Made by a program: the position numbers and the translations under genes. Source: Dimorphilus gyrociliatus (lineage: Eukaryota; Animalia; Annelida). From it: a DNA stretch of 64,000 nt. The notes below the pieces were generated by a model. That model was not told the origin of the DNA and did no database searches. It saw nothing but the letters and a program-made list of their open reading frames with translations. Positions within the stretch are counted from its first letter, which is position 1. Every line of letters begins with the position of its first letter. Shown here piece after piece: positions 12,879 to 62,896 of the stretch. The DNA lies in assembly GCA_904063045.1 (NCBI GenBank), contig CAJFCJ010000002.1:3405891-3469890 (forward strand), in the 5' to 3' direction.

Positions 12879-15800
12879 ATGGCTGACTTTGAACTCGATA
12901 AAGAAAGAATTAAAGGTTATGAAGACGAGGAAGATGGAGGAAGAGAAAAGGTTAAATTTAGCTTTGTTTATTTTATAATCGAACAATAAAATAAATTTAT
13001 GTTTAAGTGAACATGTGAAAGATATTATCATATTTATAGTAGGTCTATAAAATTTTTCATTTAAACCCGTTTTAACATATTGTTGTTGTTGTTCATTTTC
13101 ATTAATTATCATTTTTCATTTTTTCCCTCTCTTCCTCCTCCTCAGCAATCAGGAACTAGAAAAATGAAATTATTCTACATTATACTTCTTATAACAGTCG
13201 TTGTTGGTTTATCTCTGGTAAATGATATTTATTATTTAATTATTAATGTAAAACTTTATGTAATAGATAATTGACAATATGTATTAATTGTTAAACATTT
13301 TAATATTTTAAGCGTGTTTATCTTTAGTTTTTTATTATAAATAGCTAGTATAAATAATCTGTAAAATAAGAGATAAATAACTACGAAACATTTTGATGGA
13401 GATTGAAGTTACCAAGTAACAGTTTTTGACCTTAGTATTCAGTATGAAAACAGCTGTTATTAGCATATTATTTTAAGCGATTTATTCTATTTATTTCTCT
13501 ACTAATTAAGAATTTAGTATAGGTAAATAGTTTTATAATTGATAGGTTTCTTTAGTAGGAGACTATCTTTGTTTTGAATATATTTATGAATGAATCAAAT
13601 AATTTTGTAATTGACTGTGTTAAATAGAATTTGGGTAAAAAGAAAATAATAGCCATATAATTGCTTCTTACGCTAGAAAATATGGTATTTAGTGTAGTAC
13701 ATCTATATATATAGTGTACATAGATGTGATATAAAGAGAAAGGCAGAGACACAAACAGAGAATAGACAAAGATAGAGAAAAGAGAGAGAAAGGATAGATT
13801 TTGACATAAAGTAATACTTGGGTAAAATTACTAATTTCCATTTAATTCCGCAGTCCTTAGGCTTGGGACTTGGATTACCGAAGAGGGGAAGTAATACTAA
13901 CAATGAGAAAAAATGTAAGGCTTGGAATGGGAAAAGAGTCTTCTCTCACTCTAGAACGAATATTAATTGGCTGAATGGAGAGTGTCCAAATAGAATGGGA
14001 AGAAAAAATTGTCCAAGTCACATGAAATCTTCTCCTACAATTCTTATAAGTTTGGATGGTTTCAGAACCGAATATTTAAGTAGGAATGTAACACCGGCCA
14101 TACAAAAATTAGCAGATTGTGGCGTTAGGGCGGAGAGCCTGAGAAGTATTTATCCGACAAAAACCTTTCCCAATCATTATTCTATGGTTACTGGGTTATA
14201 TCCAGAGAGTCATGGTGTTATTGACAATAGAATGTGGGATCCAAAGACAAAAGATTTTTTTGCTTTGAATTTACCTACAAAAAATGACCCAAAATGGTAT
14301 CAGGGTCGACCTATTTGGTTGAATGCTCAAGATAATGGCAAAAGAGTTAAAACCTTTTTCTGGCCTGGAACTGACGTCGTTCATGAAGGGAAACTTCCTG
14401 ATGATTGTTATCAATATGATAGGTAGTTTTGTTATCATTACAAGTATTAGTGTTATTTTGTTTTCTTAAAAATGCAGACACTTTTTTTCTGCTTAAAAAA
14501 CAAGAAAATAGATTAATTTATTCAGAAAATGAATATTTAACTTGAACTAAAATTCATATCAGTGAAAATAGAGAAAAAACAACAGTATTATTATTAACGT
14601 ATCTTATATTAATATTAGTGTATCGTAATTTTAATCAGTTGGCATATTCAATTTGTTATCTTGAATCTCTGATAATAAAAATAACAGTTTCTGTGAAAAT
14701 GAAGACAAATTATAATCTTTTTTTCCAAATACAGTTCCGTTCCTTATACTGCAAGAATTGATCAGATTTTGGAATGGTTTAAAGATAAAAATTCGCCACC
14801 TGATCTGGTTATTGCATATTTTGAGCAACCGGATAGTGCCGGTCATGAATATGGTCCATTTTCGGAGAATGTTGTATCCAATTTAACAAGAGTTGATAAC
14901 CTTATTAATAGACTTATAAGTGGACTAATTCAGGAAAATTTAGAGGAATGCGTTAATATTGTTTTAGTTAGTGATCATGGAATGGCTGAAACTAAATGTA
15001 GTAAAACTGTTAATTTAAATGAATATTTGGACACGAGTAATGTCTATGTACATCAAGGTTCTTTTACAAGGATTTCTGGGAAATATCGGAGGGAGGGTGG
15101 AAAAGTTGTTGAACACAATGGTCTTTCTGACGAGGAGATAATGAACAAGATGAGTTGTAATTATTACAATAATACAAAGGATTGGTACTTAAATGCAATG
15201 TTAAAACAAGATTTACCGGTTAGAATGCATTATGTTCAACATCCTAGAATAGACAATGTTGTTGTTGACGTAGAAAATGGTTGGTATACTCTTTCGTCAT
15301 CGCAGTGTAATATTGCAAAAGGAGGGCACGGATATGACTATCTTGATGAGAATATGAAATCAATTTTCCTTGGTTATGGCCCTGGATTTAAGCAAGGCTA
15401 CGTAGGAGAAGAATTCAGTAATATAGAAATATATAATTTAATATGTAATCTACTGGATATTAAGCCAAACAATAATAATGGAACAGAGCATGCTTTAGAT
15501 CATTTTCTTTCCTCTCCAAAAAACGTTAGCGATATGATTGAACCTGATTTTCCAATTCATACCAATCTACCATCCGAAAATGAAATGAAAAAGAGACGTA
15601 TGAGTTCCAACTGTAGATGTTACGACAACGACACAGTTGACCAGTTTGATAAAGAGTTAAACTTAACCGAGTCGCAAGCTAAAGAAGTTATTAATAGAGT
15701 CTTACCTTTGGGGGAACCGTTTAGTAAAAGTCCGTATAAGAGACTAATTCAACGAAATTATGCTATTGGATATAAGGAAAGCCTTGAAACGCCTTTATTT

Positions 15801-18800
15801 GTTGCCTTTCAAGTATTGAAGCCTATTAACTCTATATTAGATAACGGCTCTAAGGTTAACGATTTGAAAAATTGTACCAGACCAGATGTTCGAATAAGAA
15901 CGTCCCGGTGTAACGTGGACAATTCAATGCTATTAACAAAGCTTTTTCCTCCAGAACTTTCTCCAAATTCAAATGACAATAATACTGATATCCGGACAAA
16001 TGCAGTGAAAATGAACAAGCAATTCGCAGACACTGTCTGGATACACCTTATTCGTTTGATTGAGGAATATGGAGAGAAATTTAACCTAATTAACGTTATC
16101 TTGGGTCCTGTTTTTGATAGCAACAGAGATGGAATAGTAGATGAAAGTCCCGCTGACGTACCAACACATTTTTATGCTGTTCTGTATGGGAATCTTACTG
16201 ATAAGATAGTATCTATCGTTATACCACACAAAGAGATTTCAGATTGTGTTAAAAAATATCCACTTATTGATTATTTTAAGAAGCATATAGTATCTTTGAA
16301 AGATCTCGAGTTGATAACTGGATTAATATTTTTTACTAAGCTAAGAAACGTACCGGAGAGACATAAGCGATTTGTACAATTACATAGCTTATGGGATGAA
16401 TTGGAGTGGAAAGATAGTAATTATAACTGCGAATTGTGCAAAAATAATGATAAAAGTACAAAACCCCTTCTTCTCATAAGTATTGATGGGTTAAGATCAG
16501 ATAAGTATGAATCTCTCGATAGTTTAGCAAAATTTTCGCAATGTGGAGTTCGGGCGAAAAAGATGAGATCAGTATTTCCATCAATAACATTCCCGAATCA
16601 TTATTCTCAGGTCACAGGACTTTACCCCCAGCATCATGGCATCATTGATAATGCAATGTATGATAAGGATATAGGAAAATTCTTTTACATCAGTTCTCCT
16701 ATAGCGAAAATTAGTGATTGGTGGAAAGGGGATCCAATATGGAATACAATAAGAAGAGATAACAAAACAGCTTTTACTTATTTTTGGCCAGGATCCGATG
16801 TTAGGATAAAAGGTTCCTACCCTAATGTTTATAAAATGTTTAACTCGTAAGTAGACTATTTTCTTCTATTTCCATATATGTAAACACGCATTTATCAGAG
16901 ACACAGATTGTATTTAAACTGAAAAATACTTTTTCTTTATTAGAGATGTGCCCAACAAGGAAAGAGTTCGTAATGTCATCGAATGGCTTGAAAGGGGTGA
17001 AGGAAAGTACGAAAGAGCTGATCTCATTACTTTATACTTTGAAAATGTCGACAAAGCTGGACATGATGGCGGTCCTCATTCCATCCAAGTTAAAGAAGAG
17101 TCTAAATCGCTTGATAAAGAATTAAAAAAAATTTTTAACTATATCTATAGAAAACGAAAGTGTGTTAATGTAGTTATAATTTCTGATCATGGAATGGCAG
17201 ATATTACATGCGATAATCAAGTTGTATTAAAAGACTATTTATCTGATTATGCTTTGAGTAAAATGAATGCATTTTATGGAACTGGAAGCCGTATAAGCAA
17301 TACATACACTAGAGGGCAGAATGGATCTTATTATAACATTCCTGAAAATGAAAGAATTCCACTATCCAAAATTAAAGCGAACTTATCAACTTGTCTAATT
17401 AAAAATCTTCAAAATTATAACAAAGAATTAGCACCAATACGCTTTCATTATTCACAATCAAAGAGAATTGAAGAACTATTAGTTTTCATCAACATAAATT
17501 GGTTGATAGGAGTGTAAGTGGGCATGAAGTTGAATTTGAATATAATAAAAAATTAATTAACGTTTCTTTCTAGAGTTAAAAAGGAATTGTGTCATCTCAA
17601 GGGCAATCATGGTTGGGATCCAACCGAAGATGACATGAAAGCCTTCTTCGCCGGGGTTGGACCAGATTTTAGACTAAATTTTACGTTTGATTATGAATTT
17701 GAAAATATTGAGTTATATAACTTAATAAGTGGTTGGTCTTAAATGTTTTAATGTATAGTAAATATGACTTTATGTTATTTCTTTTTTACATAGGCTTACT
17801 GAATGTTACCCCTTCACCAAATAATGGAACTGAAAATTCTCTATCTTTCCTTCTGAAAAATCCACCCAAATTGGACATTAAAAATGAAACTGAATCTAAT
17901 TATAATCCTACAGAATTTCCGGATTTGGCAACCTATACTTTAAGAATTAACAGAACAAACTGTTCAATTTGTCAGAACTTTACACATGATAGCAGTATGC
18001 TTGATATCTTGAATGACGAAAAACCTCAACTTATAGAGAAGCATATAAAGCACGGTTTACCGGAAATAACAGCTTTTCAAGAGAAACCAGAACTTCTCTT
18101 TCAGCAGTCCTTTGTAACGTCCTATTGGAAATTAATTTCCTATCCAGCAATGGTTGCAGCTCATTTGAATGTATCCCAAATTTCGTACAAAGAGAATTCT
18201 GATCGTAAAGATACGGATTTTTGCCCATATAAGATAGATTTTCGTCTAGAGAATGAAAAGACATGTTCTAGCTTTAAAGACCAACAGTTTCTTTTCCCAT
18301 TAAAGTGGACATCAGAACCCGATGAAGCAAAGTATCATACAAATGTAGTGGAGATGAATGAAGATTTCAAGTCGAGTAAGCGCCTTTCACATAATAATAT
18401 CTTAAACCTTTTGATTATTTATATTTTTTATTATATAGATACTTGGTCTGTTCTTTTGAAACAAGAAGTGGAAGATAAATTGATAAATAGTAAAGAAGAT
18501 TTGTACGTAATACTCGGAACAGCTTTTGATTACAATTACGATGGTTTGGCGGATAATTTAACAGAGATAAACTCAACAACACCATCCCATTACTTTTTAA
18601 TAACGCTAAAAGAAGATGTCAATTCTCGTTGGCATGGAAAATCATGGGTACTTCCTCACCTAAAATCATTTCCAGAGTGTATTGTAAGTTTTAAAACATA
18701 GTCATTAAATATATCATATTATAATTTCTATAAAACAATTTAGAATACATCCCACTACATCAGTGATCATCGGACAAGAATCCGCGATGTTGAACTAATC

Positions 18801-18878
18801 ACTGGAATGAGATTCTTAACCAATATTGATTATCAAGAAGGCCTCCTGTCAAGAATATCTTTAACATCACCAAGTTAA
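12879..18878 (+). CDS. ENPP: ENPP1/3-family ectonucleotide pyrophosphatase/phosphodiesterase, type II membrane, with tandem-duplicated PDE+NUC modules, ~1504 aa; exons 12879-12950, 13146-13217, 13854-14422, 14735-16846, 16944-17513, 17574-17731, 17794-18375, 18439-18683, 18744-18878
   Basis: All GT-AG junctions are phase-compatible, 4515 nt total. TM anchor LFYIILLITVVVGLSLSLGLGLGL resembles the ENPP3 anchor. Two sets of catalytic motifs: DGFR/TFPNH/DSAGH/SDHG/GGHG and DGLR/TFPNH/DKAGH/SDHG/GNHG. Two EF-hand-like NUC motifs: DSNRDG and DYNYDG. Confidence 0.92.
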
Positions 18879-35000: not shown

Positions 35001-38000
35001 AGTAAGTTTCAATTTTCAAATTCTACTAAAGGACATATTACTTTATATACAATAAGATATAAGGACATGGAAAAAATTTACTTGCGTTATCCTTCTTTTG
35101 TCTCTTAAAGTAAGGTCAGACACTGATTGATGCATATTTCTCTTTTCAATTAATATGAGGGAAATCAACGTAAATTCGAATGATTTTAGTCTGAAAACGC
35201 AAACCTAATAGATCTGAATAAATTAAATTTCACCCAATAAATTCTTCAATGATGTATATATTGTTGGGAATTTAGCAGCGTATCAATAACAGACTGTGTT
35301 AGAGAAGGTTAATACGGTATTCCAATTATTTGGAGCTCTGTAAGATTTAACTTATATTTTCGTGTCTTTCAGTATTACATATATTTGAAAAAAAACTAAC
35401 CTAATTATTTCCTTATTCCCTTTTTCACCCTGTCCAAGTAGGCTGAAAGTAGAGACTTACATAAGAAATGGCTGTTAATTTAGGATTCAGATAGAGTAAG
35501 GAAATAAATGGGTTCTTATCGAGATCTATTATCCGCTGATTGAAGTTGTAGCTTGATTTGAAAAGATAAGATTTCGTGTTATAAGATAAATTTTGTTGAG
35601 CTTTTCACAAAGAATGTCATTCTTAGAACGAGCACTTAACGTATAAATTATAACTGTATAACAAAACGATAACTTGGTTATTATTATCATTATACTATAG
35701 TCTACAATAGCTGGAATTGATTTATACCAATATATATATAGCTTGTACATTACAAGGTGATCTATTAAAGTACAGTAGTTGATAATTATTGCTAGAGTTA
35801 ATATAATATACAGAAGTACAAAATTATACGTTTACTTGGCAAATAAAATAGTTCTTGTGTTTCCTTTGTGTCCATTAGACGCATGGGCGAGAAAAAGTAC
35901 GTCCTGCAGCAAAAATTGAGCGTATCATAGGTTTTGTCAATATTTTAGTATAACAATTACTGACACGGCGATAATAAGCTAAATTACTTTTTATATTTCA
36001 TTGCAATTCTCTCTTTCTCTCTCTCTATTTTTTTTCTACTGTGTATAAAATATATTTCATCTATTTGGTTTTCTGATTCATTCTAATATACTTGATTCAT
36101 CATCCCTTCGTATGACTAAATTGATATCTTTAAGCTTACTCACTAAATATAAACTCGGTTGGTGTCATTTTGTTAAAATCTTTTTGAGAGATTTACTAAA
36201 AGGGAAAATTAGCTATTTCAGTTTTCCTTCTCCTCTTTTCTATACTTAGTCTTAAAAAAACTGTATTGTTACTTACTTAAAAAAAAAAAATAATTACTTT
36301 TATTGTTGGGAAAGACTCTAAAAATGTCTTACAGTTAACCCTTTATTGGACTGTAACGAATGGCATAGAAGCTTAGAATGACTGTACGGAAAGTGTTTAC
36401 CAATTTACGTAGGCTTTGTCGGCTCTTAAAGACTGTATACTGGAAAAAAATCATGCTTATTTGAGAAATCTGTCCACTTCTTCTCCCTCAATTCATTCCA
36501 CTCCTTTTCTATCAAGCCTTATCATCAATAACAAATCGAGAATTTTCAATACCGTTTCTTTCGTCCAATCATTAATTAAACGCAAGAAAATTTTTACTCA
36601 TGATATCGTTTCTAGAGTGTAATTATATCTGTCTCGGAAATAGACCATCTTTCAGTCATAAAAATGCTCAGTCACGTGACCTCAAATGAGGTAATCGATT
36701 ACAGCGAAAACGCCTATATAACGGACCGTCACTTTTTTCCTCCTTACAGCACCAGTCAGTTGATCTCCCGCAATTTTTAGAAACTCTCTGTACCTCAACT
36801 AACCCACCGCAATTTCTTAGTTGGTTACACGTACTTTGGCGGATTTCGTCTGCAGAAAGCGGTAATTAATTTATCTGTTTGCCAAGGTTCGTAATCGATT
36901 TATATCGATCTTTTACATTTTTTGCAGTTTCACACACGAATAGCGTCTGCCAAGTTTGTAATAGACGCGATTTTAACGGATTGCGTTATTTATGCAATAT
37001 ATGTAGTGGTAAATATACTCTATGTCAAAGTTGTTTTTGGAGAGGAAGAACTTCTAAGAATCACGAAGCGTCCCATCCAACAACTGAATTTCAAACATCT
37101 TCAAAAAAGTCTGAAAAATCACCAGTGAGATCTTTATCGAACTCTTTAAAAAGATCTTTCAGCTGTTCGTCTAGTAAACATCAACCGGTAGTTACTTTGG
37201 CTTCGGAATGTAATGAGAAGCGGGTAGACTTGACGCACGTCGTTCCAGCAACTCCATTACCTAAAATGATGAATGGCATAAAGGTATTACCCGAAGATAA
37301 GGCTGACGATGAACACAGACTTATCGCTAGATACGCCGCTCGTTTGGCTGCAGATGCTGAAAGACCGTCCAGATCAACTAGTGAATTAAATGCGGCGTCT
37401 ACTTGTAACCGGGCGCAGCGAGAACTGGTAGCCGAACTTGAGGCAAAAAATAAACAAATTCTCGCACAAATTGAAAGGGTAAGTTTTTTCTTTCTCTATC
37501 TATTTTTGATAAGATAAAATTAGTTTACAATTTTATATCTTTTAAAAATCCTTGTGGGAGAATTTTTTTAGAATACTGAAGATACTGTAAGAGTAAAAAA
37601 GTTACTAAAGCGTTTAGAAATAATAAGAGGTAGAGAGATCCACTCTTTCCGCCCCATCCCCTCCCTTTCTTTTCATTTCTATGCAAACCATTTTTCATGG
37701 TTTTCAAATTATTGATTACTTGAAGAAGAGAAAATCTAATTGTATGAAGTTGATCACGTGACTCTGACAAGTATCTTTCATCCGTTTTGTATATAGATTA
37801 GTTGCAAAACAGCCAAAACATACTAAGTCTTCAACTTCAGTTTGCCCTATACTCATTTAATCTTTTTAAAGCATTAACAAGAATGTTTAATTGACTATTT
37901 TAAAAGTGAAAGTATTCTCAGAGTGCAAAATTAATAACACTTAATTAACAGTAGGAGTACATAAATTAATTAGAAACAGTTTACTAAGTTCTTTTCATTT

Positions 38001-45955: not shown

Positions 45956-48900
45956 TCAACCTAGTGTAGGCCTATCGTCGTAGAGAGTTGGAGCTTGAAC
46001 AATTATACCAAAAGTACCAACAATACAGGCTGCTGAGAAAATCCAAAGGAAGAGACGATCAAGAACCATAGCAACGAATTGCCAATCTTGTTTTATCTAT
46101 TAGAATGGAAATGAATAAGTACATCTCTGTATTAGTATGTTAATTAATTTTATATTTTTAATGATTTAATAAATAATTAATTACTCTATTAAATTCATCC
46201 TGTTGCTTTAAGTGTTCTGCAATGAAGCCAACACCGATCATGGCTTGTATGGCATTGGCGGGTAAATTGGAAGAATCTTGAAGTGGTTGCTGATATTCCT
46301 CCTCCCTTACATACATTAGATTATCTTGATAAGGCTGCTTCTCATAATCAAAATTTCTTGTCTCCAATCCATCACCCCTCCTGACTGTCACCCGCCGATT
46401 ATTTTTTATTTCGTAGGCTGACATGGGCCTCCTCATTAACAAAAGTTTGGGTAAAACTTGCAGGAAGAGCTCCCTTATCCAAGGACTCATGACATGAGTA
46501 CTTGGACTCCGAAAGTGCATGTTTAACACAAAAACTGTCACTATAATTGAACAAGTCACTAGTACCATTGTAAAAAGCAGATATTTTCCAATTAAAGGAG
46601 TTGCTAAAGAAGTCGGTGGATTTATTTCAGCAACAAGCAGTAAAAAGATGTTGAGAGAATTTAAAATTGTAATACCCATAGTAATCTTCTCACCAGAATT
46701 GGCTGGTATGTAAAAGACTAATAGCGTCACGCTACAGATGGCGACACATGGTAAAATAAGATTTACTGTATAAAAAAGTGTTTTCCTTCTTATCGTAATG
46801 TTAAATTTTATGTCTGGAAATGGTTCGCTGCAGCAAGGGTAATATTTTTGATATTTTCTTGCAGGAACTGCCAGTAGATCCCACTCTGTACTTGAGTAAT
46901 AATCTCCAAGATCTATACCTCTTTCAACGACATCCAAGTCGCTCTGTTTTTCGGATAGCTCTTTGTGTTTTACATCCACAGAATAGCCATCGTAGCTCCA
47001 GCTTCCAATCTTCAAAGTACACAATTGTTCATCGAATGGAAAAAATTCGACATTAATTGGACAGAGAGATTTGTAAATTGCTGGTGGTTTCCATACTACT
47101 CTACCCGTATTATGCACTGTTGCTTTTGTTTTTAATTTGACAGTAAAATTTCCATCTGCCGAATTATATAATACAATATCAGGCAACCATAATTTCTCAG
47201 ATGGAACATATATACGAGTAACTCCTCCATATTCTTCTGGTCGCCATTGAAGCTTGTAGTCTGTCCACTCTTGTTCCAACCAGACGTTTGTCGTCATAAT
47301 TTGATTTTTTTCATCCTGTAAAACGAGAAAAAAATGAAACATCAAAGTATTGTTTAATAAAAGAATAAGCTAAAGACGAAGATTATACAAGTTTGGTGAG
47401 AAATTACAATATAAAACGTTTATATTACTCTCTGGCTATCAATCGTCTCCCTATTTTCACTTGATAAACCTAACAAGTAACGTTTAAGGGATCAAAACAG
47501 TTGACAAGGTAGAAATTAAAACATCATTTTTATTTATTACAATAATTATTTCACTAATGAATACAAGAAAATTTAGTAGTAAATAGAAAAAAAGAGAGTT
47601 CTTTCTAATTTATTATATGGATTTCTTTTACGGCGAATATCTATATATCTATTGTGAAAATTTTTACAAAGCAAACATCAAATACCATAATCCCTTTTTA
47701 TTTTAGTTAAAGTATTAAAAATCATACATTTTCATCTTTTTTTCTGTCTTTGCCTTTATATTAGTATATATATATATAAATTTTATATTGACTATATATA
47801 CAAATTTACATATATACTGTATATATACTTTGTATATACACTATTTATATATTCTTCTAATATTTTCATCTTCATAAGGCTTCTAGCTATTTTTATGATT
47901 TTATTTCTTTTCTAGTTGTTTTCTTTTTGGATTTTTTTCTCTATTTTTCTTTTAGTTTGCCGGTACAGAGCTCCTATTGATTTCTGCGACCCAATTTCTT
48001 CAAAGCTACACGCTACTATGTCTGTCTCGAATCTCTTCCAACATCCTCTGCCAGCCTAACTGTTTATCTATCAATTTATAGTACCCTAATCAAACGTAAA
48101 AGAGAGGACAATAGTTTATCATCATTACAGCAAATATTGATTTCCTTTTATCAATAAATCAATGAAATGTCCACGTGAATTTGTCAATTATCCAGCTGTC
48201 AAATGATTTCTGTCAATTCGTACAACATGGGAAAAGCAAGCATTCCTAACTATATTGAATATATGATTTATTTAGACTGAAGGACGCTATCCGTTTGAAG
48301 CTTATAATAAGTATTTTTTCCTTTACTTCATTTAAACAATCTTTTGTTCTTTTGAAAAAAAATTTCGTTTCCTTTTGCTTTTCCTCTTTCCATTTTCCCA
48401 TTTTCCGTTTCTTCTCTTCGATCGATAATTAAATTATTTTATGCTTCAGAGAAGGAAAAACTTTTATACACCTTAATTAATATTTTTAATTTTCCCTTTT
48501 ATTTTTCAATTAGGAAAAACAATATACTATCTATAGTGTTAGAAGTATAGACTGTGCACACTGTGTATCAATGTATACAGAACACTGTGTATACGAGTAT
48601 AAATATATACAAGTTTTCTATACGAGTTTGCTCTCTCTATCTCCCTCTCCCCTCTCTCTCTCTCTTTGCTAACTGGTGACTAGTGATATTCAACGGCAGT
48701 TGCTGTGAAATATCTGCTTTCTATCATTTACGGTAAACTAGAGAGATTTACTGATACAGAGATTTGAAAGAATTGCAATATTATTCGATTATTAATTTAT
48801 CAATAGCTATTAAATCATAATCGATTTTAGCAAACTAAACATACTTTTTTTTTATATTTATTAGTTTGTTTTTAATTAAATAGAAAGTATAATATTTAAC

Positions 48901-61582: not shown

Positions 61583-62896
61583 TTAATAAATTTTATATTT
61601 CTTTGAATAGCTCTGACATTCTCTACGGATTCTTTCGCCATCTAGTAAGAAATCATTAATATGCTTGTAAGATGTCTTATTTTTATGTGAATCTGCAAGA
61701 TATTTCGTAAATATTTCATCGCATTCATCGTTATATTCCATGTTTACTTGTTTGTAAATTTCTCTCAAGATTTCCAATGGATTTTGTACTAAATCTTTAA
61801 AGTTAATATCAATAGCTCTTTGGAATGAGCAATTTTTTATTTCTTCTATAGATCTCCTCAAATCATATTTTCTTACCTCTTTCAAGTATTTTTCTGTTAA
61901 AAAGTCGCTAATAAATTTAACGTTTCTCGAGAGTGGACTTTGAAATAATTTTGAATCGTATATTGTCAAATTTGTTATAGATGAGATGACTTGTTCTACG
62001 TTTCGGTGAATTGTTATAAATTGAGCATCTTTAAAGACTGTGAATAGGGCTTTCAAATTTACATTCGAATTTAAATGGTGCATTAAGAGAAATCTTCTAT
62101 TTTTCATATTCTGTTGAAATGCTATTGCCTGAAGAGACCTTTTAATACTTTTGTAAATTTTTATATGATCATCGAATTTGATTTTCTCAATAAACTTGGA
62201 ATATTTTGGTAGGTTTAGCATTTTTGGAATCAGAACGAATATTCCTTCAGCTTTTAAAAGATTTGCCAATTCCTCTGGATCCTTCATTGTTGTACCATGG
62301 GCAGCCATTATTTCTTTAGAGCCTACCAAGTATCTTCGGAATTTTAAAGATTTGTCAAAGTTTAAAATTGTTTTTTCATTAGTTTCTGTTGTCGGTTCTT
62401 CAGGAAAAGGAATAGACGAAATCATTTCCCATAGAGCAGGAGCTTTCCACCTTTTATCTTTACTCATAAGAAGATGTAGAAAAGTGCTGCCAGTCCTTGG
62501 TAGAGTTATAATAAAAACTGGCTTTTCGAACGGAACATCTTCAATTTCGGGATGGACCTCTACGGCTTGAATTATTTTATCCTTATTTATCAAGCTTGAA
62601 GTAATTTCAGATTTCAATCTGATGTAGCCTGAAAGGCTAATCTCTCTCTTTTCATCTATTTCATTGAATAAAATTGTTAGTGCTTCTTGAGTGTGTTGTT
62701 CTCTCTTTAGTAACTCTTTTAGGCTATCTGGTAAAGAGGAGTAAAATTCTTGAAAGGAGAAAGAATTGAGTCTTATTCCAAAAAAAGTGAACATTGAAGC
62801 ATCAATAAAATCAGAAAATCTGATAATCAATGAATGAAAGATAAAAATACATCTTTCAATAAACGAAGCCAGTAAATTCGTGGAATAGTCTTCCAT
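61583..62896 (-). CDS. Sulfotransferase (Sulfotransfer_3 / bacterial Stf-like), single exon, 437 aa
   Basis: 5'-PSB loop PVFIITLPRTGSTFLHLL followed by D...WE; 3'-PB-like IHRNVEQVISS; C-terminal DINFKDLVQNPLEILREIY pattern typical of this family; uninterrupted ORF. Confidence 0.82.
   Translation of the reverse strand: MEDYSTNLLASFIERCIFIFHSLIIRFSDFIDASMFTFFGIRLNSFSFQEFYSSLPDSLKELLKREQHTQEALTILFNEIDEKREISLSGYIRLKSEITSSLINKDKIIQAVEVHPEIEDVPFEKPVFIITLPRTGSTFLHLLMSKDKRWKAPALWEMISSIPFPEEPTTETNEKTILNFDKSLKFRRYLVGSKEIMAAHGTTMKDPEELANLLKAEGIFVLIPKMLNLPKYSKFIEKIKFDDHIKIYKSIKRSLQAIAFQQNMKNRRFLLMHHLNSNVNLKALFTVFKDAQFITIHRNVEQVISSITNLTIYDSKLFQSPLSRNVKFISDFLTEKYLKEVRKYDLRRSIEEIKNCSFQRAIDINFKDLVQNPLEILREIYKQVNMEYNDECDEIFTKYLADSHKNKTSYKHINDFLLDGERIRRECQSYSKKYKIY

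What the first reader, a model, noticed from the sequence alone, without database searches (positions are those of the whole stretch)
12879..18878. Double-barrelled ENPP: two complete catalytic PDE + nuclease-like modules in one membrane-anchored chain
Seen: the architecture is cytoplasmic N-terminus - TM - PDE1 - NUC1 - PDE2 - NUC2 (~1504 aa). The NUC1-to-PDE2 junction (...LHSLWDELEWKDSNYNCELCKNNDKSTKPLLLISIDGLR, ~16380-16495) lies inside one uninterrupted 2112-nt exon, so it is not a splicing artefact. Both PDE domains keep the catalytic Thr, the Asn and all six zinc ligands. Known: characterised ENPP1/2/3 have one PDE + one NUC module, hydrolyse extracellular ATP, and ENPP1/3 also cleave 2'3'-cGAMP. 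I know of no described two-module ENPP (not searched). Inference: a covalent pseudo-dimer or two-step ecto-nucleotide processing enzyme.
Basis: partly seen in the sequence, partly recalled or inferred. Interest (0 to 1): 0.85.

Follow-up and report, generated by a model that had tools for sequence, protein, structure and literature searches.

The report
Multi-module tandem ENPP ecto-enzyme family
A small marine worm makes a real, spliced cell-surface nucleotide-cutting enzyme with two complete catalytic units in one chain; annelids, molluscs and a priapulid have 2- to 4-unit versions that I found described in no paper, and the units probably prefer different substrates.

Summary
Observation confirmed. 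The 9-exon gene (12879-18878) encodes 1504 aa, identical to Dimorphilus gyrociliatus DgyrCDS1695: TM-PDE1-NUC1-PDE2-NUC2. One 4937-nt spliced contig from an independent study carries all eight predicted splice joints, so it is neither an assembly join nor two genes. Both PDE domains keep the Thr nucleophile, the Asn and six Zn ligands, and both fold confidently as ENPP1/3. It is not a Dimorphilus oddity. About 35 database organisms or samples have the design: two modules in annelids and Priapulus, mostly three or four in molluscs. None of my literature searches found it described. The modules are old (about 33% identical) and match leech modules by position. New lead: module 1 keeps the lysine before the nucleophile, whose loss (mouse ENPP1 K237A) abolishes ATP but not cGAMP hydrolysis; module 2 has Ile there. 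20 of 25 multi-module chains mix Lys and non-Lys modules, though these chains are related. Best reading: two independently active, differently tuned nucleotide pyrophosphatases on one membrane anchor; no activity was measured. The scan had not noted this on other DNA of this genome. New variant of a known kind; interest 0.55.

The parts
12879..12950 (+). Exon 1: ATG and cytoplasmic N-terminus (aa 1-24)
   Evidence: RNA joint skipping 195 nt in run X2
13146..13217 (+). Exon 2: most of the type II transmembrane anchor (TM about aa 30-57, continuing into exon 3)
   Evidence: hydropathy; joint in X2 and X3
13854..14422 (+). Exon 3: end of TM, short stalk without SMB domains, N-half of PDE1 (D116, K151, catalytic T152 at about 14163, N173)
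14735..16846 (+). Exon 4 (2112 nt): rest of PDE1 (D271, H275, D318, H319, H436), lasso, NUC1 with EF-hand-like motif, junction, N-half of PDE2 (D822, I855, catalytic T856 at about 16587, N877)
16300..16496 (+). NUC1-to-PDE2 junction, 65 aa from the last NUC motif to the PDE2 DG motif; 64-79 aa in all multi-module relatives where it could be measured
16944..17513 (+). Exon 5: PDE2 middle (D978, H982, D1023, H1024)
17574..17731 (+). Exon 6: PDE2 (H1144)
17794..18375 (+). Exon 7: end of PDE2, lasso 2, start of NUC2
18439..18683 (+). Exon 8: NUC2 with EF-hand-like motif (aa 1408-1417)
18744..18878 (+). Exon 9: end of NUC2 and stop codon

Best explanation
A type II membrane ecto-enzyme built by an ancient internal duplication of the whole ENPP1/3 catalytic unit (W..C..CP pre-segment, PDE, lasso, NUC). 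Shown: gene, transcript, domain order, conserved catalytic residues, predicted folds, and orthology of both modules to leech modules. From family knowledge: each PDE uses two Zn ions and a Thr nucleophile to release a nucleoside 5'-monophosphate; each NUC is a catalytically dead, Ca-binding stabiliser of its own PDE. Inferred: both sites work independently with different preferences. Module 1 (Lys151, Arg174) is the NTP-to-NMP+PPi site. Module 2 (Ile855, Ala878; His982 kept) is poor at ATP but cleaves other diesters or anhydrides such as cyclic dinucleotides, NAD+, ApnA or nucleotide sugars. One anchored chain would thus clear a broader pool of extracellular nucleotide signals at fixed stoichiometry.
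For: Full catalytic sets in both modules, also in a related species with 74-81% PDE identity in both modules. Introns 3 and 4 sit at the same aligned codon (238 and 942), the mark of a genomic duplication. Modules are 32-34% identical; a Dimorphilus-only duplication is rejected (AU p=0.039); m1 and m2 group with Helobdella and two transcriptome proteins by position (SH-aLRT 95 and 99). AlphaFold: pLDDT 89.7, pTM 0.86 for PDE1-NUC1-PDE2; 87.2 and 0.84 for NUC1-PDE2-NUC2; top Foldseek hits are ENPP3/ENPP1. Mouse ENPP1 K237A abolishes ATP but keeps cGAMP hydrolysis, and H362 is needed for cGAMP (bioRxiv 10.1101/2021.05.04.442665). Module 2 has Ile/Leu at that position in all five annelids of this clade; 20 of 25 multi-module chains mix Lys and non-Lys modules.
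Against: No activity data. The Lys position is variable: only 25 of 50 single-module homologues have Lys, and Xanthomonas NPP has Leu yet hydrolyses ATP. The 20/25 count is kin-correlated and amounts to about two independent lineages; Owenia and Priapulus are Lys/Lys. Some mollusc modules have lost catalytic residues, so duplicates can drift into non-catalytic roles. K237A was measured in mouse ENPP1 lysates and may not transfer.
Confidence: 0.5

Rival explanations
1. Dosage or avidity: both modules are roughly equivalent broad-range NPPs, and duplication just puts more active sites on one anchor and extends reach from the membrane.
For: Module number varies from 2 to 4 with recent re-duplications (Liolophura m1/m2, Mya m1/m2, Littorina m2/m3 are sister pairs); Owenia and Priapulus are Lys/Lys; a Leu enzyme can still cut ATP.
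Against: [quoted passage not shown]
Confidence: 0.25
2. Coupled two-step processing: one site makes the substrate of the other (e.g. Ap4A to ATP + AMP at module 2, then ATP to AMP + PPi at module 1; or cyclic dinucleotide to linear pApG to monomers), with channelling between rigidly packed sites.
For: pTM of 0.86 and 0.84 exceeds what freely linked modules should give (about 0.64 and 0.70 from the largest rigid part; my inference); junction length is conserved at 64-79 aa.
Against: Coordinates and PAE were not available, so the distance between sites is unknown. Single-module ENPP1 already handles these substrates alone (PMC8808174). Three- and four-module chains fit a relay poorly.
Confidence: 0.1
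3. One module is mainly structural, allosteric or a nucleotide-binding scaffold (a covalent stand-in for the ENPP1/3 homodimer) with little turnover.
For: Degenerate modules exist in Octopus (m1, m2), Dreissena (m2), Mactra (m3) and Patella (m1). ENPP1/3 dimerise through TM cysteines or SMB domains; this protein has no SMB domain and no TM cysteine.
Against: In Dimorphilus, its relative, Owenia and the two annelid-like transcriptome proteins both modules keep the catalytic residues, with equal conservation of PDE1 and PDE2.
Confidence: 0.1
4. One module is an autotaxin-like lysophospholipase D.
For: Family precedent (ENPP2).
Against: Both modules keep the insertion loop (FWPG.D to the Tyr340-equivalent) that the ENPP2 sequence lacks; deleting that loop is what gives lysoPLD activity (PMC8808174). 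Best structural matches are ENPP3/ENPP1.
Confidence: 0.03
5. Assembly or annotation artefact joining two tandem genes.
For: Such merges occur: the Caenorhabditis auriculariae model P0150 has a second TM between its two halves.
Against: Junction inside one exon; spliced contigs cross it in two runs; single-ORF transcript contigs in two other samples; the junction is also within one exon in Owenia and Priapulus and in a related species.
Confidence: 0.02

Closest known systems
Vertebrate ENPP3 / ENPP1 (and snake venom PDE)
   Same: Type II TM anchor; PDE + lasso + NUC unit; Thr nucleophile, six Zn ligands, Asn, insertion loop, Phe/Tyr nucleotide slot, EF-hand-like motif. Best PDB sequence hit ENPP3 E=2e-122; Foldseek TM 0.87 by target.
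   Different: Two catalytic units in one chain (3-4 in most molluscs); no somatomedin-B domains; incomplete lysine claw (module 1 K/R, module 2 I/A); about 33% identity.
ENPP2 / autotaxin
   Same: PDE + NUC unit and catalytic chemistry.
   Different: ENPP2 is secreted, has SMB domains and lacks the insertion loop; here the chain is anchored, the loop is present and there are two units.
Single-module invertebrate ENPP1/3-like proteins (auto-named 'venom phosphodiesterase-like'; Lineus, Tubulanus, Owenia paralogue, Branchiostoma, chelicerates)
   Same: TM-PDE-NUC without SMB; nearest single-module kin.
   Different: One module only. None that I know of is biochemically characterised.
Xanthomonas NPP (PDB 2GSN)
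   Same: PDE fold; Leu before the nucleophile, like module 2; degrades cGAMP and ATP.
   Different: Bacterial, PDE only, no NUC, no anchor.

Membership tests
ENPP (NPP) family, alkaline phosphatase superfamily | PDE domain (PF01663) with Thr/Ser nucleophile and two-Zn site of seven residues | tested here: met
   Both modules; definition in PMC8808174
ENPP (NPP) family | Hydrolyses nucleotide pyrophosphate or phosphodiester bonds | not testable with these tools
   Needs an enzyme assay
ENPP1-3 subgroup | PDE followed by lasso loop and nuclease-like NUC domain with EF-hand-like Ca motif | tested here: met
   Twice over; structure match to ENPP3/1
ENPP1-3 subgroup | Two N-terminal somatomedin-B domains | tested here: not met
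   No PF01033 at E<=0.1; only about 50 aa between TM and PDE1
ENPP1-3 subgroup | One PDE-NUC unit per chain | tested here: not met
   Two units
ENPP1/ENPP3 | Single-pass type II membrane anchor | tested here: met
   One hydrophobic segment at aa 30-57 after a charged N-terminus; topology is predicted, not measured
ENPP1/ENPP3 | Insertion loop and Phe257/Tyr340 nucleotide slot | tested here: met
   Module 1 F/Y, module 2 F/F; loop present in both
ENPP1 | Lysine claw K255/K278/K528 | tested here: not met
   Module 1 K/R, module 2 I/A; third position not alignable reliably
ENPP1/ENPP3 | His for cGAMP hydrolysis (mouse H362) | tested here: met
   H275 and H982; necessary, not sufficient
ENPP1 or ENPP3 orthology | Groups with vertebrate ENPP1 or ENPP3 in a tree | tested here: not met
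   Vertebrate ENPP2/ENPP3 form their own clade (99) apart from all invertebrate modules; ENPP1 itself was not in the tree; co-orthology is the likely relation
ENPP2 / autotaxin | Deletion of the insertion loop forming a lipid pocket | tested here: not met
   Loop present in both modules

The most novel reading that the evidence does not exclude
An undescribed family of tandem ENPP arrays (2-4 units) in annelids, molluscs and a priapulid, in which each chain couples an ATP/PPi-generating unit to one or more natural 'K237-less' units specialised for extracellular cyclic dinucleotides: nature's separation of ENPP1's two jobs (purinergic/mineralisation and cGAMP-STING damping) into modules of one rigid chain, possibly evolved more than once.
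Probability: 0.2. Interest if true: 0.8.

Novelty: new variant of a known kind. Interest (0 to 1): 0.55.

Why it matters
All characterised ENPP1-3 enzymes have one catalytic unit. A conserved 2- to 4-unit design across oysters, mussels, scallops, abalone, octopus and annelids has gone unremarked under names like 'uncharacterized protein'. If the units split ATP/pyrophosphate production from cyclic-dinucleotide clearance, the family gives natural substrate-selective ENPP modules. It would also give a direct handle on extracellular nucleotide signalling in invertebrate immunity and on pyrophosphate control in shell-forming molluscs. An ENPP with a nuclease domain rose 4.6-fold in zebra-mussel plasma after poly I:C (PMC7148315); whether it is this protein is not known.

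Tried and rejected
Assembly or annotation merge: rejected. Dimorphilus-specific duplication: rejected, AU p=0.039. Autotaxin-like module: rejected by the insertion loop. Single versus repeated origin: not resolved. The free tree puts the two Priapulus modules together (96) and most mollusc modules together (92), but one clade of all last modules is not rejected (p=0.21 without, p=0.073 with Priapulus). The test for annelid first modules including Owenia did not finish, and the careful bootstrap searches did not finish, so supports are SH-aLRT from quick trees. Trees used a subset of rows; Hydra, Patella m1 and C. auriculariae m2 were left out, and a suspect stretch of the Priapulus model (aa 258-365) was removed. 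Literature: nine searches found no description of a multi-module ENPP; subscription journals are not covered. Full-length searches used the database protein P0033, which has its own reference.
Full report
Observation. The window is AT-rich compact animal DNA. This is identical to DgyrCDS1695 of the annelid Dimorphilus gyrociliatus (P0033, CAD5112474.1). Profile searches give PDE 108-501, NUC 544-797, PDE 814-1210 and NUC 1252-1502. Both PDEs keep the Thr nucleophile, the Asn and six Zn ligands, and both NUCs keep the EF-hand-like motif. The spliced model was searched exon by exon by reference; the joined step was left out, and full-length work used the database protein P0033.

It is one gene and one transcript. 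The NUC1-PDE2 junction lies inside the 2112-nt exon 4. In run X2, from an independent study, one 4937-nt contig shows all eight predicted splice joints without mismatch; X3 has a 2397-nt contig from inside NUC1 to the 3' end; the DNA run X1, which may be the assembly's source, is continuous over 12879-17874. Contigs cannot exclude shorter isoforms.

It is a family, not a one-off. A related species has the same long exon (69% identity) and the same layout. Owenia fusiformis is colinear across the junction. Searching with a 2199-aa scallop protein, which limits candidates to long proteins, and mapping domains gave about 35 organisms or samples with repeated PDE-NUC units. Two units occur in Dimorphilus, Owenia, Helobdella, two single-ORF transcript contigs of unnamed species that group with Helobdella, the Patella model and Priapulus. 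Three occur in bivalves, a chiton, octopus and several snails, and four in Haliotis, Mya and Littorina. The junction is 64-79 aa wherever it could be measured and matches the normal W..C..CP pre-PDE segment. In Owenia and Priapulus it also lies within one exon. Nemerteans, chelicerates, deuterostomes and cnidarians gave single-module proteins. The Caenorhabditis auriculariae two-PDE model has an internal TM and is probably two merged genes.

History. The two Dimorphilus modules are 32-34% identical and share an intron at the same codon (238 and 942), so they arose by genomic duplication. The duplication predates the Dimorphilus-leech split: first modules group together (95) and second modules group together (99), and a species-specific duplication is rejected (AU p=0.039). 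Whether annelids, molluscs and Priapulus share one event is unresolved. The free tree suggests repeated expansion (Priapulus pair 96, mollusc modules 92) and recent re-duplications within molluscs, but positional orthology of last modules is not rejected (p=0.21 and 0.073).

Structure. AlphaFold gives pLDDT 89.7 and pTM 0.86 for PDE1-NUC1-PDE2, and 87.2 and 0.84 for NUC1-PDE2-NUC2. The best Foldseek and sequence matches are ENPP3 and ENPP1. A pTM above the share of the largest single module (about 0.64 and 0.70) suggests a defined packing between modules.

Mechanism. From established ENPP chemistry (PMC8808174), each PDE should release a nucleoside monophosphate using its Thr and two Zn ions, and each NUC should stabilise its PDE. 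Both modules keep the insertion loop and aromatic slot, so neither is autotaxin-like. They differ at the lysine claw: module 1 has Lys151 and Arg174 at human ENPP1 K255 and K278 (numbering); module 2 has Ile855 and Ala878. In mouse ENPP1, K237A at this position abolishes ATP hydrolysis but keeps cGAMP hydrolysis, while H362, kept in both modules, is needed for cGAMP (bioRxiv 10.1101/2021.05.04.442665). Module 2 is Ile or Leu in all five members of this annelid clade; bivalves typically have Leu, Val, Lys in modules 1-3; 20 of 25 chains mix the two types. I therefore favour two active sites with different preferences (0.5). Against this: half of single-module homologues also lack the lysine, Xanthomonas NPP has Leu and still cuts ATP, Owenia and Priapulus are Lys/Lys, and the chains are kin. 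Rivals are simple dosage (0.25), a channelled relay (0.1), a structural second module (0.1), lysoPLD (0.03) and artefact (0.02). Whether Dimorphilus makes cyclic dinucleotides is unknown; earlier scan notes describe several cGAS-like genes in this genome, some apparently dead (unchecked).

Comparison and novelty. It works like ENPP1/ENPP3 and belongs to the ENPP family by its PDE domains. It fails the ENPP1-3 definition on SMB domains and on unit number, and it is not a one-to-one orthologue of a vertebrate ENPP. My literature searches found no account of multi-module ENPPs, the family review lists none, and the scan had no earlier ENPP note in this genome. Databases do already hold the architecture under uninformative names, which lowers surprise. 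Verdict: real, conserved, apparently undescribed variant of a known enzyme family with a cheap, decisive test; interest 0.55.

Noticed in passing
P0310, P0327, P0309 (Octopus and a related transcriptome), modules 1-2: Cephalopod 3-module ENPPs have lost the nucleophile and/or Zn ligands in modules 1 and 2; only module 3 is intact. Dreissena m2, Mactra m3 and Patella m1 are also degenerate: pseudo-enzyme modules kept in the chain.
   Followed up: partly
P0291 Haliotis, P0292 Mya, P0293 Littorina: Four PDE-NUC modules in about 2950 aa; Mya m1/m2, Littorina m2/m3 and Liolophura m1/m2 are recent internal re-duplications.
   Followed up: partly
L005:10001-54250 (Priapulus caudatus): The two-module ENPP seems split by annotation: a 1009-aa model stops inside PDE2 and a 403-aa PDE+NUC model follows about 1 kb later.
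   Followed up: partly
P0199, P0314, P0316 (Armadillidium, Trinorchestia, Hyalella): Peracarid crustacean ENPP-like proteins with a degenerate active site and a 400-740 aa insert between PDE and NUC.
   Followed up: no
P0150 (Caenorhabditis auriculariae): 1520-aa two-PDE model with a second TM at about 780-807: probably two tandem genes merged by annotation.
   Followed up: partly
L002:30382-60102 (Owenia introns): Six genes nested on the opposite strand inside the ENPP introns: two sulfotransferases, two GPCRs and two short Tox-ART-HYD1-domain genes.
   Followed up: no
window:15586-17874, run X6: A 2024 coral metatranscriptome holds short pieces about 98-99% identical to this gene, one spliced: a Dimorphilus-like worm in that sample.
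   Followed up: no
window:5869-6600, 36879-37517, 46158-47345, 61583-62896: Neighbouring ORFs: Smad MH2 domain, ZZ zinc finger, nicotinic-receptor-type channel, sulfotransferase. No functional link to the ENPP seen.
   Followed up: no
window:17044-17064 (PDE2, aa about 975-982): Module 2 reads 'VD..GH' at the Zn1 Asp/His motif where most ENPPs have 'PD..GH'; the two annelid-like second modules, Branchiostoma and Xanthomonas NPP share the Val.
   Followed up: no
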